Shown: positions 7,850 to 62,926 of the stretch, piece by piece
Layout: every line of letters starts with the position of its first letter
Numbering within the stretch: position 1 is the stretch's first letter
Assembly (NCBI GenBank): GCA_038087875.1
Contig: CM075990.1
Coordinates: 6,138,001 to 6,202,000 of the forward strand
Length of the DNA: 64,000 bases
Direction: 5' to 3'
From: Malacoraja senta
Lineage: Eukaryota
Notes under the pieces: generated by a model
Seen by the model: the letters and a program-made list of their open reading frames with translations, nothing else
Told to the model about the DNA's origin: nothing
Databases searched by the model: none
Position numbers and translations under genes: made by a program

Positions 7850-7968
7850 GTGGATTTGCTGTAGTGTTTTTAGCCAGGACGCCCAGTGGTGTAAGATGTG
7901 CTCTGAAACGAATGTATGTAAACAGTGAACATGACCTCCAAGTTTGTAAGCAGGAAATAGCCATTATG
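7850..7968 (+). CDS. AAK1: NAK kinase coding exon 2 ([40 protein letters not shown])
   Basis: ttttag|GT...ATG|gtaagg; 119 nt; Gly loop, catalytic Lys, helix C Glu. Confidence 0.95.
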
Positions 7969-10900
7969 GTAAGGAAAAAATTATATACCCGGTAGTTTAG
8001 ACTAAAGTACCAACCTGGCTTGTTAAAGTCTTTATGCTTTGCATTTTATTGCTGATTATGTGTGTTTTCAATGGAACTTTCTATCAATTCTGATACTGAA
8101 ACACATTCAGTTGCTTCGGTCGTTCGTAAAACTATTGCATGAAAGAATAGTTGACTTGCTCAAGCATTTGATATTTAACGAATGAATTTAACTTGAACTG
8201 ATTCTTGTAGACTCTAATTGTCTACTGCCGGAAAGGTGTATGGTGTGAGCAAGTTGTTGCATCTTGTCACAGACCTGCCAACGTGCAGAAAAAATTTAAA
8301 CAATTTTTGCAAAAATGGTTAAGAAGAAAACAAAGGAGAAGCAATTTGCCAAATCTCACAATTAATTTAAATGAGCGTATCTCCTAGATCTTTACCTGTC
8401 CGTTTAAAATAACCTTTGTCCTAGCTGGTTTACATATTGTTTGCCTTTTCTTTCTCATTGCCAGTATCTTAAATCCACGTCTATTCAATTGCTGTCCAGA
8501 AAGGATGACAAAGTTAATTGCTTAAGTTAGGTTGAAACCAAAATAAAGGATGGAGACAAATAACTGTTGATCATAAACAAAGGTTAACTTAACTGGAACA
8601 AGGATATATTTGGTGTGAAGTTTTTCCGTCATTATCTTTCCATTCAAATGGAAAAATCCTGTCCTCATTTGGTTGAAGTTCTGCAAATGTTTTCACTGAA
8701 AATAGTTTGTCGAAGGAAAAGTTTTTTTAAATCCAGCAATCCTGATTTAATTGGGGGGGGGGAAATAATGTTGAAAGTTATGTAGAAAGCAGCAAATATA
8801 GTGCCACTATTCAAAAAGAAAGTGAGAGAAAATCTGAAAATAACAGCAAGCTCTCCTGACATCAGTACTAGTCAAAATATTAGGATGCGGTTATAGGCCA
8901 TGTAGAAAATCATTAAACTGAGTCAATGCTGAAATAGTCTTTTTTGAGCATTATTAAACCAGTGGATTAATATTTGGATTTTCAAAAGCATTCAATAAGG
9001 TGCCATTCAAGAGGTTGTTTCTCAAGTTCATGCTGATTAGTTTGCGATATGATAACATCAATTAAAAATTGGTTGAAGATAGAAACTGATTAGCTTTGAA
9101 GAGGAATTTTCAAGATGACAATCTGAAACTTGGAAGAATCTGGCATGATTGCTTTCATCAAACAAAGTTTAACAAGGTAGTTTCTGGAGATAGTGGTCTG
9201 AATCATAGAATATTAGGTAGGCCTTAAATCTGAGGAGATGATATTTCTTTCCTCTGTGTTTGCTATTTTCTGCAACAGCGGTCTGGTTTCTCAAGTAACA
9301 CGTTCTAGATGGAGATACGTTTTCCTTTGCCATAAAAGAAACTTGGGGATATGATGATATGCCAGAAGATTAAAGTTGGGTTGAAGCTCAGTTGTGATCT
9401 TATTAAATTTTGGATAACTTCATGACTATGTGACCCGCTTTTGCTGTTGTTTCTTAAGTTCTACTCCATTCTGGAGTTTTAATTGCCTTTACTTTTTGTA
9501 TTTCAGCAGTGAGGGTTTTAGCTGTTCATTATATGAAATATGCCTAGCACTTCGGGGCCATGAGGATGTCTGTTTCTTTACAAGTTTGCAGTTGATACAC
9601 ATCTTTCAGAATCGGCATAACTCGATGAAGTCCTTAATTTGAAGCAACAGGTTCTACAATTTGCATAACAATTCAGTTTCATTGGCAATGTGGGGTAAAA
9701 ATGAGAGCACCAAGTATTATGAGTTGGACTAGAATTTGGGTGAAGCTCAAATAATCCTCTTGATCTTTGGCTTTTAAAATATTGAAGAATTGTTTTGGAA
9801 ATCGTTTGTCTTTGCATATGAGATTTGGGGCAAATTGGGTTTCACATGACTCGGTGGCCTTGTCAATCTTAATGTTCTTGATAGCAGCGTGCCATAGAAT
9901 ATTAGCATTCACCTTGCTGATCTCGCTATCCTCCACGTTCTTCTCCTTGGAGTATACCATTTAAGGCATACAAGCTGATTTCTGTTGAAGGAATATATCC
10001 AAACAATCAACTGTGACCATTCTCATTATAATGTACTTAAATCCTTTGTTCTTTTGCTGATAATTAAGGGAAAAAATCCAGTAAAATGGGTTTGGTTTAA
10101 GTGCAAACAAATTAAATAGCAAATTAAATAATTGCAGAAGCTCTTGAGACTGCAACTATTGCAGCAACAACATATATTCCACTTTTAAAATGCATATTTG
10201 AAAGAACAAGATATTTTATTTAATCTGCAGATAATGTCGCTCATTGACAAAAAGTTGAAAAAATACATGATAATTGCTACATGGTACAGCGGGAGCTTGT
10301 CAGTGACAAAGTCAATTCTGGAAACGCCCTGAAGAAACTGCTCAAAAACAGGCAGCTTCTGTCCTAGATAATATAGTGCTGCAGCTATTTATAATGTGTA
10401 TTTTTGTGTACCTTCAGTGTAAATTTAAGGGATCACTGTAACAGACTTTTTCTTCAGTGAGGAAGGCATTTTTACAATCAGTAGCTGATTGCAGAATTTA
10501 GTAATCCCAAAAAAACAGAAAAATCATTGGTTAGTAAAGAAACGTGGTTAAAAATGGTTAGATCAAATTAAACTTTGCTTCATAATTGGATCAGCAGTGT
10601 TCAGACAATATAATCCAGAGTAACAATATTGCCATCAAATAGAAAAAGAAATGCAAGTGGTTTGGCACCCCACCTACTCTAATTTGTTAATCTTTGTTTC
10701 ATACTTTGCCTTGCTCCATGCAAGCCACTTTACTGATCACACCACTATCATCGGTATGGGCTTTAAATTGGAAATTTCACAGGAGATTTGAATGATAAAT
10801 GGCCGAGCTGTGTGGTAGGTTTTCTGATTTAAAAGGGCAATTATATTTGACTGGTTGTGTTATATTAGGATACCAAATGAAAGTCTCAATTGTTGACTTT

Positions 10901-13900
10901 GGCTCATTAGAAAATTCACTTGAAGATTAGTAGGACTGAGAATTTGAGAGGTCAGGAACTGAATGAGAGCACACATCGACAGATACACAGAACCAAAGGA
11001 TAAATCAGCAAAGGAAGGGAGCAATGAGGTCTTATGCATGTTACTTTAACAAATTGTTTTTTTATAGGTCGATAGTGAAAAGACTTTGATGTCCTTATTT
11101 CATTTTTCTTTTGTGTAAGTTGATCACCCAGTGGGGTGATTGGAATGATTTGTTTAAAATTTAGTGTGCTTGGGAACATTTATGCATGATAACTTTGAAC
11201 AAAAAAGATAACTGGCCTGCAACACAAACTGTACCTATTTAATTATCTTGCAGGAAGGCAACTGATATACTTGGTATCAAGGCTATCAAAATGTTCATAA
11301 AACAAGTAAACAAGGTCACATTTTTTCTATTGAAATTAATTGTTGTGATCATTGAAAGATTCAACTCGGCACATATTAATACATTTTATTTGCATTGCAG
11401 TTGAAGTAGTATCTGATTTGCATGTGATACGTTTGAATACATGCTAATAAACGAGCATGTCCAACCTCATCTATTGCATCCGCTGCTCTAGATGTCAGCT
11501 GATCCACATCGGTGAGATCAAGCGGAGGCTTGGCGATCGTTTTGCTGAACACCTCCGCTCGGTCCGCAATAACCAACCTGACCTCCCAATGGCTCAGCAA
11601 TTCAACTCCCCCTCCCATTCCGTATCCGACCTCTCTGTCCTGGGTCTCCTCCATGGCCAGAGCAAGCAACACCGGAAATTGGAGGAACAGCACCTCATAT
11701 TCCACTTGGGGAGTCTGCATCCTGGGGGCATGAACATTGAATTCTTACAATTCTGTTAGCCCTTGCTGTCTCCTCCCCTTCCTCAGCCCTCGGGCTGTCT
11801 CCTCCCATCCCTCAGCCCTCGGGCTCCTCCTCCGCCTTTTCCCTTTCTTCTCCCCACCCCCCCCCATCAGTCTGAAGAAGGGTTTCGGCCCGAAACGTTG
11901 CCTATTTCCTTCGCTCCATAGATGCTGCTGCACCCGCTGAGTTTCTCCAGCATTTTTGTGTACCTTCTAATAAATGAGCATGCAGTTAAATATAAAAAAC
12001 TACTTAACTGGCTTGTAATGAAGCTTGTAAGTGTTTCCATCTAGTCCAGAGATGCTCAACGAACAGGATGGCAGAGGTTTTTATTATTGCATGAAATGTT
12101 CAGTTGTAAGATAATGGTGTGTTTCCATTTCACTTTACACTTTAAAAGACAGGGAAATTGTATGTTGGTTTCAGATTGGAGGTAAACTTTTAAATTTTTT
12201 TGGGGTGTCAGGCAGGGAAATCAAAGAATTGAAATAATGCTTCAAAATCAAAGCACTGCAAAGATGGAATGAAGTTTCAGGAGCAGACTGACCCCCGCCC
12301 TCCCCCCACCTCCCATATGTAAATGTGAATACTGACTTTGATTGCCTTATTTGCCTCTCGCTGAAAATAGCTTTTGGGCTTTTGTAGTGTTTTAATGGAT
12401 GGCGATCTGCATTCTTTAAAAACTGTTAAAAGATTTCTTTCAGTGTGGCTAAAAATATTTATTTCTTTTTTTTTTAAACAGAAAGATCTCTCTGGGCATA
12501 AAAATATTGTTAACTACCTTGACTCCAGTGTTGCCTCGATAAATGTTAGTGACGTTTGGGAGGTCCTTATTCTAATGGAATACTGCAGAGGTTTGTTAAT
12601 TTTATTTTTATAGATATCTATGTATAGCATGTGTAACAATGTATGGAAGCAATGCAATAGTAGAATTTTCTACTGATTACTTAGTTTAACATTTAGAATT
12701 GTTTAAATTCAATACATTTTAGCAAAAGATCAATTTGAAACTCTTATCCAAAGAAGCTGGTTGAAAATATTAATTTGACTTTTTTCTTTCTACTGACTGA
12801 AATATCTGTAAGACATTATGAAAACTTGTAGAGAATTAGATATTTTACAATAATTATTAAATTACCATAAATGTTCCTTCTGTTTGAATACCTTTTTATT
12901 TAATGTTATTGAAGCTTGGGTCATCTTAACATTTGGATTAAATAAATATTCTTTAAAGAATTAGAGCGGAAGTGAGTCCAACAAAATTAATGCTTGCAGT
13001 CCCATGAGTGAAATAATCTTCCATAGAATGGCATAAAAATTGGTCCATTTGTACCTATGAACTCCCCGTGACCTTGTGTATTTCCTCCCATATTCAAAGG
13101 ATGTGCACATTTTGGATGTCAATTGGCCACTAAATTGCCTCTAGTGTGCAGGTGAGAGGGATGGGCTGGTTGAGTGAAGATGTGTGTCAATGGGAATGCA
13201 TAGAAATTAAAATGGGATTAGTGTGTAAAGGTGTGTGATGGTTGCCACAGGTTTGGTGGGCAAATGGGCCTGTTTCTATGCTGAATCACAATTTGCTTCT
13301 GTTTAAGTGTTTGTATCATTTTCAACTGATTTCACCTATTTGAATGCAGGTATATCTATACCATTTAGTATTTGATATACCAGTCAACCCATGGACATCA
13401 ATAATTACCATACCAAACAGATGTGGCAATGACCTAAATTCAGCTGTGCCAGTAGATTTGTTTACAAGGATGTGAGCTAAGGTGATTTTTCTCAGTTAGT
13501 TTCAACTGACCTGGCAGTATTGGCTTGCTGATTCGGTGATTTAACAAAGTATAGATTATATAGTCTGGATCAGTCTTTGCCTCATCATTTTCCACTGCAT
13601 CTATGTATACTATTCCTAAACCTTCCATTATTTATTCCAGTGTGTGATGCTTATCAGTTCTCCATATTAAATTGTATTTGCTGTTAATGTATCAATTTAC
13701 AGGCTTTATGAAATCTCTTTGAATCAGATTTTGGACTCAACTGTGGCAGTTTGACATTGAATTTGACATTTGTTTCTGAATCCAAGTTATTCTTATAAAC
13801 TAGAAATCATGAGCTATGATTTGCAGATCACATTATTTGGCCATTGTTCTACAATCATTATTTATTATCTTTGTTACTATCTTTCATTGAAAATCCCTTT

Positions 13901-62799: not shown

Positions 62800-62835
62800 T
62801 ATAATGGGAGAGAGAGAGAGAGACAAAAGACTTAC

Positions 62836-62926
62836 CAGGAAAGTACCTCTCGGGTACTTTACTGTAATAAAACAGAAATGCCAAACTTGCTAGAAGATAC
62901 ATAATACACACTCTTGGAGCAAACAC
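62836..62926 (-). CDS. PAQR3: PAQR3-like, penultimate coding exon (VFAPRVCIMYLLASLAFLFYYSKVPERYFPG)
   Basis: Minus strand ttttcctag|GTG...CCTG|gtaagt; 91 nt; TM6 and the PERYFPG motif of the PAQR/hemolysin-III family. Confidence 0.92.

What the first reader, a model, noticed from the sequence alone, without database searches (positions are those of the whole stretch)
7850..62926. Mosaic AAK1/BMP2K kinase beside PAQR3: possible third vertebrate NAK ohnolog
Seen in the sequence: AAK1-type segments ([58 protein letters not shown]). Also seen: BMP2K-type residues ([45 protein letters not shown], terminal DPFSAAPFP). The gene is tail-to-tail with a PAQR3-like gene. From recalled knowledge, human BMP2K rather than AAK1 is convergent with PAQR3, and human BMP2K lacks the TPPSSP/HRRILSD exon. 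Inference: either a paralog from the early vertebrate genome duplications that was lost in mammals, or a copy retaining the ancestral pre-duplication architecture.
Basis: partly seen in the sequence, partly recalled or inferred. Interest (0 to 1): 0.72.

Follow-up and report, generated by a model that had tools for sequence, protein, structure and literature searches.

The report
Skate BMP2K-locus kinase, misnamed AAK1-like
This is an intact skate gene for an endocytosis-regulating kinase that sits where bony vertebrates keep BMP2K; it looks like a mix of two kinases because it kept old features that bony-vertebrate BMP2K lost, so it is most likely not a third gene copy.

Summary
All 14 quoted peptides are on the + strand at the stated places. 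They belong to one gene with 16 internal exons, all AG/GT, and two mutually exclusive last exons: one ends in LVDQLIDL, the other in [13 protein letters not shown]. Exon 1 lies upstream of the window. The last two PAQR3 exons lie tail-to-tail on the minus strand.

The window comes from a skate. The gene is 97% identical to the Amblyraja radiata protein that RefSeq calls 'AAK1-like'. About 20 cartilaginous fishes carry this gene, each alongside a separate true AAK1.

The 'mosaic' is retained ancestry. Every 'BMP2K-type' and 'AAK1-type' state also occurs in hagfish, lamprey or invertebrate relatives. Bony-vertebrate BMP2K is the derived form.

Gene order supports BMP2K orthology. Sawfish, chimaera and skate show kinase then PAQR3, convergent, as teleost BMP2K does. 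Bird AAK1 is followed by NFU1.

Trees that include cyclostomes put the gene on the BMP2K side (support 91-97), and a shark-specific AAK1 duplication is rejected. Cyclostome genes, however, sit closer to bony-vertebrate BMP2K than this gene does, so a hidden third ohnolog is not excluded (about 0.18).

The scan had already noted the two alternative tails on this same window, and an AAK1 locus elsewhere in this genome.

The parts
7850..7968 (+). NAK kinase exon 2 (GFAVVFL...[10 protein letters not shown]...IAIM), phase-1 acceptor; exon 1 lies outside the window
   Evidence: AG/GT borders and frame; tblastn to skate orthologues 97-100%
12482..12590 (+). exon 3 ([10 protein letters not shown]...LMEYCR)
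15432..15574 (+). exon 4 ([11 protein letters not shown]...IIHRDLK, catalytic loop)
15661..15782 (+). exon 5 (VENILL...[11 protein letters not shown]...VEEEIK, DFG motif)
18408..18489 (+). exon 6 ([18 protein letters not shown]...)
18609..18741 (+). exon 7 ([19 protein letters not shown]...)
18849..18952 (+). exon 8 (end of kinase domain)
19872..19951 (+). exon 9
21165..21373 (+). exon 10 ([15 protein letters not shown]...TPRKR)
25308..25486 (+). exon 11 (Q-rich)
29104..29262 (+). exon 12 (Q-rich)
38230..38453 (+). exon 13 ([22 protein letters not shown]...)
   Evidence: the motif is ancestral
41353..41507 (+). exon 14 ([19 protein letters not shown]...)
43718..43834 (+). exon 15 (…[13 protein letters not shown]); skipped in one Rhinoraja isoform
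44119..44208 (+). exon 16, cassette (skipped in skate transcript assemblies P0494/P0495)
49286..49387 (+). exon 17, cassette (also skipped in P0494/P0495)
49953..50047 (+). alternative last exon A (…[15 protein letters not shown] plus stop); AATAAA lies 11 nt after the stop; gives a product of about 793 aa
   Evidence: used in RefSeq isoforms of many sharks and rays and in transcript assemblies
54014..55125 (+). alternative last exon B (369 codons, …[15 protein letters not shown] plus stop); same phase-1 acceptor as A; gives a product of about 1132 aa
   Evidence: 86-94% identical to skate orthologues; sub-threshold BMP2K_C match
57940..58076 (-). PAQR3 last coding exon plus stop (…SHQWWHFLVVLMFYWWHQ…PCLKIK*)
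   Evidence: identical coding sequence in sawfish next to its orthologous kinase
62836..62926 (-). PAQR3 penultimate coding exon (VFAPRV…SKVPERYFPG)
   Evidence: (HlyIII, E=0.001, below cut-off for this 32-aa piece)
55360..57939 (-). PAQR3 3' untranslated region, conserved as DNA with sawfish and in islands with chimaera; it fills most of the gap between the two convergent genes
   Evidence: tblastx hits in all frames, about 65-90% identity

Best explanation
The window holds exons 2 to last of the skate orthologue of BMP2K, the non-AAK1 member of the AAK1/BMP2K pair of Numb-associated kinases. It lies convergent with PAQR3, as BMP2K does in bony vertebrates. RefSeq calls the same gene 'AAK1-like' in about 20 cartilaginous fishes. 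The reason is that the cartilaginous-fish copy evolved slowly and kept ancestral features that bony-vertebrate BMP2K lost. These are the TPPSSP-HRRI-SDV segment, TPRKR, the small cassette exons and the short LIDL last exon.

Shown: the gene is intact and has the full catalytic signature (ALK lysine, HRDLK, DFG, APE). Its products end in one of two tails chosen by mutually exclusive last exons with the same splice phase.

Inferred from the family: it is an active Ser/Thr kinase that phosphorylates the AP-2 mu2 subunit and related [L/I]xxQxTG sites in clathrin-mediated endocytosis. The long disordered tail recruits it through NPF, DxF and DPF motifs. The short tail ends in the LIDL motif that, in human AAK1, binds the PDZ domain of PDLIM5.

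It follows that the two-tail architecture predates the AAK1/BMP2K split. The LIDL tail is then not an AAK1 invention.
For: - Gene model: 16 internal exons with AG/GT borders and one frame, giving 740 or 1079 codons from exon 2. It is 97.0% identical to Amblyraja radiata 'AAK1-like X1' and 98.7% identical to skate transcript assemblies that splice exon 15 to tail A.
- Two loci per species: true AAK1 and this gene lie on different chromosomes or contigs in catshark, sawfish, stingray, manta, sevengill shark and others.
- Synteny: a HlyIII/PAQR gene lies convergent just downstream in the window, in sawfish and in chimaera. Teleost BMP2K lies between an annexin gene and a convergent HlyIII gene. 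Bird AAK1 is followed by NFU1.
- Characters: LMDFC and GHYVLC are fixed in all 14 AAK1 sequences in the alignment and absent here. Every 'BMP2K-type' and 'AAK1-type' state of the window recurs in cyclostomes or invertebrates.
- Tails: long AAK1 isoforms of ray, dog and eel also end in DPFxAPF.
- Trees with cyclostomes place the clade with cyclostome genes plus BMP2K and away from AAK1. Support is 91/85 on 484 conserved columns, 96/89 and 97/87 after removing the fastest sites, and 93/84 on the kinase domain alone. Without BMP2K, the clade joins the cyclostome genes at 97/93.
- The AU test rejects a chondrichthyan-specific AAK1 duplication (p=0.0037).
- No bony-vertebrate protein ranked between the cartilaginous-fish orthologues and ordinary AAK1 in the search with the catshark protein.
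Against: - The clade is never the exclusive sister of bony-vertebrate BMP2K. Hagfish and lamprey genes come between them (94-98 support), and forcing the exclusive pairing costs 9-16 log-likelihood units (AU p=0.009, 0.033, 0.022, 0.062).
- Without cyclostomes the best tree pairs the clade with AAK1 (84/76). AU cannot reject that pairing (p=0.13-0.14).
- The LIDL exon and cassette exons 16/17 are shared with AAK1. They were not found in the teleost BMP2K, snake BMP2K or lamprey loci.
- Tail B scores only 17 bits against Pfam BMP2K_C (cut-off 27), while lamprey scores 42 and teleost 335.
- Whole-protein similarity is higher to AAK1 than to BMP2K.
- The absence of a separate BMP2K in cartilaginous fishes rests on top-120 hit lists, not on a genome-wide count.
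Confidence: 0.7

Rival explanations
1. Hidden paralogy, a true third ohnolog. AAK1, this gene and BMP2K are three old lineages. Cartilaginous fishes kept this one and lost BMP2K. Bony vertebrates did the reverse. The linked PAQR3 copies were lost reciprocally in the same way.
For: - Best trees have the form (AAK1,(this clade,(cyclostomes,BMP2K))), and this persists after removing fast sites and in the kinase domain alone.
- AU disfavours an exclusive pairing of this clade with BMP2K (p=0.009-0.06).
- BMP2K and the cyclostome genes share NQMN at the GQVVN-x-MN site, whereas this gene, AAK1 and invertebrates have L there.
- The LIDL exon and cassette exons are shared only with AAK1.
- Lamprey has a significant BMP2K_C match and this gene does not.
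Against: - It needs reciprocal loss of two adjacent genes (kinase and PAQR3) in both lineages, while keeping the same convergent arrangement.
- The grouping of BMP2K with cyclostomes joins the two longest ingroup branches, which is the classic long-branch pattern.
- Under the current view that the second genome duplication is jawed-vertebrate-specific, cyclostomes should lie outside both copies whichever reading is true.
- No species was seen with all three genes. No bony-vertebrate orthologue of this clade appeared.
Confidence: 0.18
2. A cartilaginous-fish-specific duplicate of AAK1 that landed beside PAQR3 and replaced BMP2K. This would make the RefSeq name 'AAK1-like' literally correct.
For: - Whole-protein similarity is highest to AAK1.
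- It shares the LIDL tail and the TPPSSP-HRRI segment with AAK1.
Against: - AU rejects a clade of this gene plus cartilaginous-fish AAK1 (p=0.0037).
- The jawed-vertebrate AAK1 clade excludes it at 92-98 support.
- It lacks the AAK1-fixed LMDFC and GHYVLC states.
- The shared segments are ancestral.
Confidence: 0.03
3. It is simply the AAK1 orthologue of this species.
For: RefSeq naming of the orthologues, and the LIDL tail.
Against: - A separate, clearly orthologous AAK1 exists in every sampled cartilaginous fish.
- Earlier scan notes report an AAK1 locus on another piece of this same genome.
- The downstream neighbour is PAQR3, not NFU1.
Confidence: 0.01

Closest known systems
BMP2K (BIKE) of bony vertebrates
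   Same: - Genomic position: convergent with PAQR3 (teleost locus).
- Same NAK kinase domain (73-91% identity per exon to the teleost gene).
- An exon 15-type DxFGxxPF exon followed by alternative last exons. Mammalian long and short variants are described in PMC7473771.
- A long disordered tail ending in DPFxAAPFP.
- Trees with cyclostomes place it on the BMP2K side.
   Different: - It keeps the TPPSSP-HRRI-SDV segment, TPRKR, cassette exons 16/17 and the LIDL last exon. I did not find these in frog, snake or teleost BMP2K proteins or loci.
- The long tail does not reach the Pfam BMP2K_C threshold.
- It is not the exclusive sister of the BMP2K clade in the trees.
AAK1 (AP2-associated kinase 1)
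   Same: - LIDL C-terminal exon, TPPSSP-HRRI-SDV segment and [11 protein letters not shown].
- The same set of small C-terminal exons and the same two-tail design.
- Higher overall similarity, which explains the RefSeq name.
   Different: - It lies outside the jawed-vertebrate AAK1 clade.
- It lacks LMDFC and GHYVLC.
- Its downstream neighbour is PAQR3, not NFU1.
- It coexists with a true AAK1 in the same genomes.
RefSeq 'AP2-associated protein kinase 1-like' of cartilaginous fishes (e.g. Amblyraja radiata XP_032868702, Scyliorhinus canicula XP_038638812, Callorhinchus milii XP_042192630)
   Same: It is the same gene. Identity is 97% to Amblyraja and 94% to Rhinoraja. The exon structure, both tails and the PAQR3 neighbour all match.
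   Different: Species differences only. The long tail diverges fast: 86% identity within skates, 57% to stingray, about 40% to sharks and 28% to chimaera.
Cyclostome NAK genes (Myxine 'AAK1-like', Lampetra fluviatilis CAN0052337)
   Same: - They share the 'BMP2K-type' kinase-domain states, and hagfish also has HRRIVSDV.
- They group with this clade when BMP2K is left out.
   Different: - No LIDL exon was found in the lamprey locus. That gene has one large last exon, and its neighbours are PTH2 and HADH-like genes, not PAQR3.

Membership tests
NAK kinases, AAK1/BMP2K subfamily | Protein kinase domain with intact catalytic motifs and close similarity to AAK1/BMP2K | tested here: met
   ALK lysine, HRDLK, DFG and APE are present in the spliced frame. 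Exon 4 matches solved AAK1 at 6e-23 and BMP2K at 1e-20, against GAK at only 6e-06. Skate orthologue P0488 scores 150 bits to Pfam Pkinase.
NAK kinases, AAK1/BMP2K subfamily | Q-rich middle region and a disordered C-terminus with NPF/DPF-type endocytic motifs | tested here: met
   Exons 11-12 are Q-rich. The frame also has WNPF, a second NPF, DMF, DVF and a terminal DPF.
NAK kinases, AAK1/BMP2K subfamily | Atypical activation-segment C-terminal helix, and kinase activity on AP-2 mu2 Thr156 | not tested
This is inferred from about 80-90% kinase-domain identity.
BMP2K orthologue group | Conserved position: convergent with PAQR3 | tested here: met
   Seen in the window, sawfish, chimaera and teleost BMP2K with a convergent HlyIII gene and an annexin gene upstream. 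For chimaera, one search lists a HlyIII-family gene model on the minus strand that overlaps the kinase gene's span and runs past its end. The annexin upstream in cartilaginous fishes could not be checked, because nothing was called within 10 kb.
BMP2K orthologue group | Groups with BMP2K rather than AAK1 in a rooted tree | tested here: inconclusive
   It falls on the BMP2K side at 91-97 support when cyclostomes are included. It is not the exclusive sister, though. Without cyclostomes it pairs with AAK1 at 84/76, and all three resolutions pass AU.
BMP2K orthologue group | Pfam BMP2K_C domain at the C-terminus | tested here: not met
   17.1 bits against a cut-off of 27, and only the last 17 residues match. 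This domain is also found above threshold in bird and turtle AAK1 (precomputed hits), so it does not discriminate the two paralogues.
BMP2K orthologue group | It is the only non-AAK1 gene of the pair in the genome | not testable with these tools
   No whole-genome search of this skate is available. Hit lists showed only two loci per cartilaginous fish, but they list only the best 120.
AAK1 orthologue group | Nests in the jawed-vertebrate AAK1 clade and carries the AAK1-fixed residues | tested here: not met
   The AAK1 clade excludes it (92-98 support). AU rejects joining it to cartilaginous-fish AAK1 (p=0.0037). It has LMEYC and GNYVLC where AAK1 has LMDFC and GHYVLC.
AAK1 orthologue group | C-terminal LIDL motif (PDLIM5 PDZ ligand in human AAK1, PMC13346677) | tested here: met
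   Tail A ends in [10 protein letters not shown] plus stop. The same exon is present in the chimaera and sawfish loci. Binding was not tested.
PAQR3 (neighbouring gene) | HlyIII/PAQR domain and PAQR3-type C-terminus | tested here: inconclusive
   The 32-aa exon scores 19.3 bits to HlyIII (cut-off 26.2). The coding sequence is identical to the sawfish gene, whose called product hits HlyIII. It is 66-68% identical to the HlyIII gene beside teleost BMP2K. The name PAQR3 itself rests on recalled human sequence and position.

The most novel reading that the evidence does not exclude
The gene is a third ancient NAK ohnolog, sister to the BMP2K-plus-cyclostome lineage. On this reading it is retained with its own PAQR3 copy only in cartilaginous fishes, and true BMP2K and its PAQR3 were lost there. 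This would be hidden paralogy of a two-gene block between cartilaginous and bony vertebrates.
Probability: 0.18. Interest if true: 0.6.

Novelty: new member of a known kind. Interest (0 to 1): 0.3.

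Why it matters
Practically, the 'AAK1-like' label in about 20 cartilaginous-fish annotations most likely hides the BMP2K orthologue. Anyone counting kinases or ohnologs in these genomes would miscount.

Biologically, the gene shows which paralogue changed. Bony-vertebrate BMP2K lost the LIDL last exon, the HRRI segment and the cassette exons. AAK1 and the cartilaginous-fish gene kept them. A 2026 paper (PMC13346677) treats the LIDL tail as AAK1-specific, as the basis of AAK1's focal-adhesion role, and as emerging in jawed vertebrates. 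This locus suggests the tail predates the AAK1/BMP2K split, and that sharks and skates have two LIDL-bearing kinases. That is testable with a peptide pull-down.

The unresolved position of the cyclostome genes makes this family a small, clean test case for long-branch artefact versus hidden paralogy.

Tried and rejected
- A profile made of a hagfish scaffold plus window exons was tried twice and rejected, because MAFFT tore the short exon rows apart. A cleaner five-exon version worked but returned mostly bird AAK1.
- Look-up of the chimaera isoform X3 failed because only the longest product is indexed. Isoform X1 worked.
- Searches for an annexin gene within 10 kb upstream of the sawfish and chimaera genes found nothing.
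- tblastn and a regular-expression search found no LIDL-type exon or HRRI exon in the teleost BMP2K, snake BMP2K or lamprey loci.
- The long tail could not be used for orthology. Outside the clade only short motifs match.
- The protein atlas gave taxa only at phylum level, which was of no use for counting loci.
- Earlier-findings look-ups for PITX2, ANTXR2, FRAS1, HADH and annexin on this genome were blank.
- Rfam found nothing in the window.
- Literature searches found no paper on BMP2K in sharks.
- The Nfu_N/Peptidase_S41 insert in the whale-shark gene model was considered as a synteny clue. I rejected it because it has no counterpart in the window.

Full report
**What is there**

The stretches around them have canonical splice borders.

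Sixteen internal exons (7850-49387) join in one frame to either of two last exons:
- Tail A, 49953-50047, ends in [14 protein letters not shown] plus a stop. An AATAAA lies 11 nt after that stop.
- Tail B, 54014-55125, has 369 codons and ends in [15 protein letters not shown] plus a stop.

Both tails have phase-1 acceptors. They are therefore interchangeable after the same donor. Counted from exon 2, the products are 740 and 1079 residues. Exon 1 (about 53 codons in orthologues) is not in the window.

The frame holds the ALK lysine, HRDLK, DFG and APE motifs. Exon 4 matches solved AAK1 and BMP2K kinase domains at E=6e-23 and 1e-20.

On the minus strand, two exons (62926-62836 and 58076-57943, stop at 57942-57940) encode a PAQR3-type C-terminus.

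**Whose genome, and is the gene known**

A search of protein-cluster representatives with exon 4 was followed by three homologue searches. These showed that the gene belongs to a group that RefSeq calls 'AP2-associated protein kinase 1-like'. About 20 cartilaginous fishes carry it, from chimaera to sharks, rays and skates.

The window's long isoform is 97.0% identical to Amblyraja radiata isoform X1 and 93.7% identical to Rhinoraja longicauda X1. The window therefore comes from a rajid skate.

Transcript assemblies from a close relative are 98.7% identical. They splice exon 15 directly to tail A. RefSeq isoforms of the orthologues use both tails. The gene model and both tails are thus supported by independent annotation and by RNA from relatives.

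Each of these species also has a separate, clearly orthologous AAK1 on another chromosome or contig. Earlier scan notes report an AAK1 locus on another piece of this same genome.

**Why it looks like a mosaic**

- The 'BMP2K-type' states are [35 protein letters not shown] and NPPD..WNPFG. They also occur in hagfish, lamprey or invertebrate NAK kinases. Several occur in shark or bird AAK1 too.
- The 'AAK1-type' states are [16 protein letters not shown] and the TPPSSP...HRRI.SDV segment. They also occur in cyclostomes and invertebrates. Invertebrates have ..PP.SPT....HRRN.SDT.
- Only LMDFC and GHYVLC are fixed in AAK1, and the window lacks both.
- Bony-vertebrate BMP2K is the form that lost or scrambled TPRKR and the HRRI segment.
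- Long AAK1 isoforms of ray, dog and eel end in DPFxAPFP. Lamprey and bee proteins have the same motif. A DPF...APFP terminus is therefore not BMP2K-specific.
- Tail B evolves very fast: 86% identity within skates, 57% to stingray, about 40% to sharks and 28% to chimaera. Outside the clade only short motifs match. It scores 17 bits to Pfam BMP2K_C, against a cut-off of 27.

The mosaic is therefore shared ancestry. By itself it does not mark a separate paralogue.

**Gene order**

| Species and gene | Neighbours seen |
|---|---|
| Sawfish orthologue | HlyIII-family gene on the opposite strand, 7.8 kb downstream of the annotated short-isoform end; both tail exons present in the DNA |
| Chimaera orthologue | Minus-strand HlyIII-family gene model that overlaps the kinase gene's span and runs past its end |
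| Teleost BMP2K | Annexin (+), BMP2K (+), HlyIII (-) |
| Bird AAK1 | NFU1 downstream |
| Lamprey NAK gene | PTH2 and HADH-like genes |

The skate PAQR3 coding exons are identical to sawfish's. They are 66-68% identical to the HlyIII gene beside teleost BMP2K. The convergent kinase-PAQR3 pair therefore links this gene to BMP2K, not to AAK1.

**Trees**

I built maximum-likelihood trees (LG+C20 PMSF) from 35 sequences: the window, 8 cartilaginous-fish orthologues, 6 cartilaginous-fish AAK1, 8 bony-vertebrate AAK1, 4 bony-vertebrate BMP2K, 3 cyclostome genes and 5 invertebrate genes. I left out 13 redundant, partial or long-branched rows.

| Data set | Result | Support |
|---|---|---|
| 484 well-filled columns | AAK1 is one clade | 94/92 |
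| 484 well-filled columns | Window's clade is one clade | 100/100 |
| 484 well-filled columns | Window's clade joins cyclostomes plus BMP2K | 91/85 |
| Fastest 15% of sites removed | Same side | 96/89 |
| Fastest 30% of sites removed | Same side | 97/87 |
| Kinase domain only | Same side | 93/84 |
| BMP2K left out | Window's clade joins cyclostome genes | 97/93 |
| Cyclostomes left out | Window's clade pairs with AAK1; BMP2K basal | 84/76 |

- The AU test rejects a cartilaginous-fish-specific duplication of AAK1 (p=0.0037).
- Without cyclostomes, all three resolutions pass AU (p=0.12-0.20).
- With cyclostomes, hagfish and lamprey always sit between this clade and BMP2K. Forcing an exclusive pairing of this clade with BMP2K gives p=0.009, 0.033, 0.022 and 0.062.
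- Pairing the clade with all AAK1 is never rejected (p=0.13-0.14).
- An earlier quick tree on 949 looser columns, which included the Q-rich regions, also paired it with AAK1 (84).

**Reading the conflict**

The BMP2K and cyclostome branches are the two longest in the ingroup. AAK1 and this clade are the two shortest. The recurrent split is therefore exactly what long-branch attraction produces.

On the current view, the second genome duplication is specific to jawed vertebrates. Cyclostome genes should then lie outside both jawed-vertebrate copies on that side, whether or not this gene is the BMP2K orthologue. That is established knowledge, not tested here. The tree therefore settles one thing: the gene is not AAK1 and not an AAK1 copy. 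It leaves open whether it is the BMP2K orthologue or a hidden paralogue.

Two observations lean toward a hidden paralogue:
- The LIDL exon and cassette exons 16/17 are shared with AAK1. They were not found in the teleost BMP2K, snake BMP2K or lamprey loci.
- BMP2K and the cyclostomes share a derived Q in GQVVN-Q-MN.

Against it, a third ohnolog needs reciprocal loss of two adjacent genes in both lineages while the same arrangement is preserved. No species showed three genes. No bony-vertebrate orthologue of this clade appeared above ordinary AAK1 in the search with the catshark protein.

I put BMP2K orthology with retained ancestral architecture at 0.70, a hidden third ohnolog at 0.18, and the remainder on other readings.

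**How it most likely works**

Shown:
- The kinase gene is intact.
- It has two mutually exclusive last exons and cassette exons.
- Relatives express the short form.

Inferred from the family (PMC13346677, PMC7473771):
- It is a constitutively active Ser/Thr kinase acting on AP-2 mu2 and related sites in clathrin-mediated endocytosis.
- The long tail is a disordered scaffold of NPF, DxF and DPF motifs for endocytic partners.
- The short tail ends in the LIDL motif that binds the PDLIM5 PDZ domain in human AAK1.

If the orthology holds, the LIDL tail predates the AAK1/BMP2K split. The published statement that it is AAK1-specific then holds only for bony vertebrates.

**Verdict**

This is a real, intact gene, already annotated in relatives as 'AAK1-like'. 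It is most likely the skate BMP2K orthologue. The third-ohnolog headline is not supported, but it is not excluded.

Noticed in passing
window 55360-57939 (minus-strand sense): The stretch downstream of the PAQR3 stop codon is conserved as DNA with the sawfish locus. tblastx hits occur in all frames at about 65-90% identity. Short islands (about 56114-56171, 57447-57537, 57643-57730 and 57786-57837) are also conserved with chimaera. It is probably a long, constrained PAQR3 3'UTR that fills the gap between the two convergent genes.
   Followed up: partly
P0381 (Rhincodon typus 'AAK1-like'), residues 390-564: The whale-shark RefSeq model of this gene carries an Nfu_N piece and a Peptidase_S41 piece between the exon 10 and exon 13 equivalents. 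The skate window has nothing similar. It is probably a chimeric model or a misassembly. NFU1 is the normal downstream neighbour of AAK1 in birds.
   Followed up: partly
window 62386-62889 (-), 1303-1554 (+), 11451-11756 (+): There are transposon-like open frames in introns. One is a 168-aa frame in the last PAQR3 intron (…[19 protein letters not shown]…), and a similar piece occurs in the chimaera locus. Another is a reverse-transcriptase-like frame with FADDTTIVG. The third is a 102-aa frame (…[13 protein letters not shown]…LIFHLGSL…).
   Followed up: no
window 1-4000: This block is GC-rich (52% against 33-45% in the rest of the window) and full of overlapping open frames of repeat type. It lies in intron 1 of the kinase gene and does not hold exon 1.
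   Followed up: no
L005 (Lampetra fluviatilis OZ243603.1:832631-874361): The lamprey NAK gene lies between a PTH2-domain gene and a HADH-like gene, not beside a PAQR gene. Its last exon is about 497 codons and follows the WNPF exon directly. Human HADH is on 4q, like BMP2K; that is recalled, not tested.
   Followed up: partly
window 43718-43834, 44119-44208, 49286-49387: Exons 15, 16 and 17 behave as cassettes in relatives. Exon 15 is skipped in one Rhinoraja isoform. Exons 16 and 17 are skipped in skate transcript assemblies that join exon 15 to tail A.
   Followed up: partly
window 15432-15574 and the alignment: At the GQVVN-x-MNQRL site, bony-vertebrate BMP2K, hagfish and lamprey share Q. 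This gene, all AAK1 and most invertebrates have L. It is a single site, but it feeds the grouping of BMP2K with cyclostomes.
   Followed up: partly
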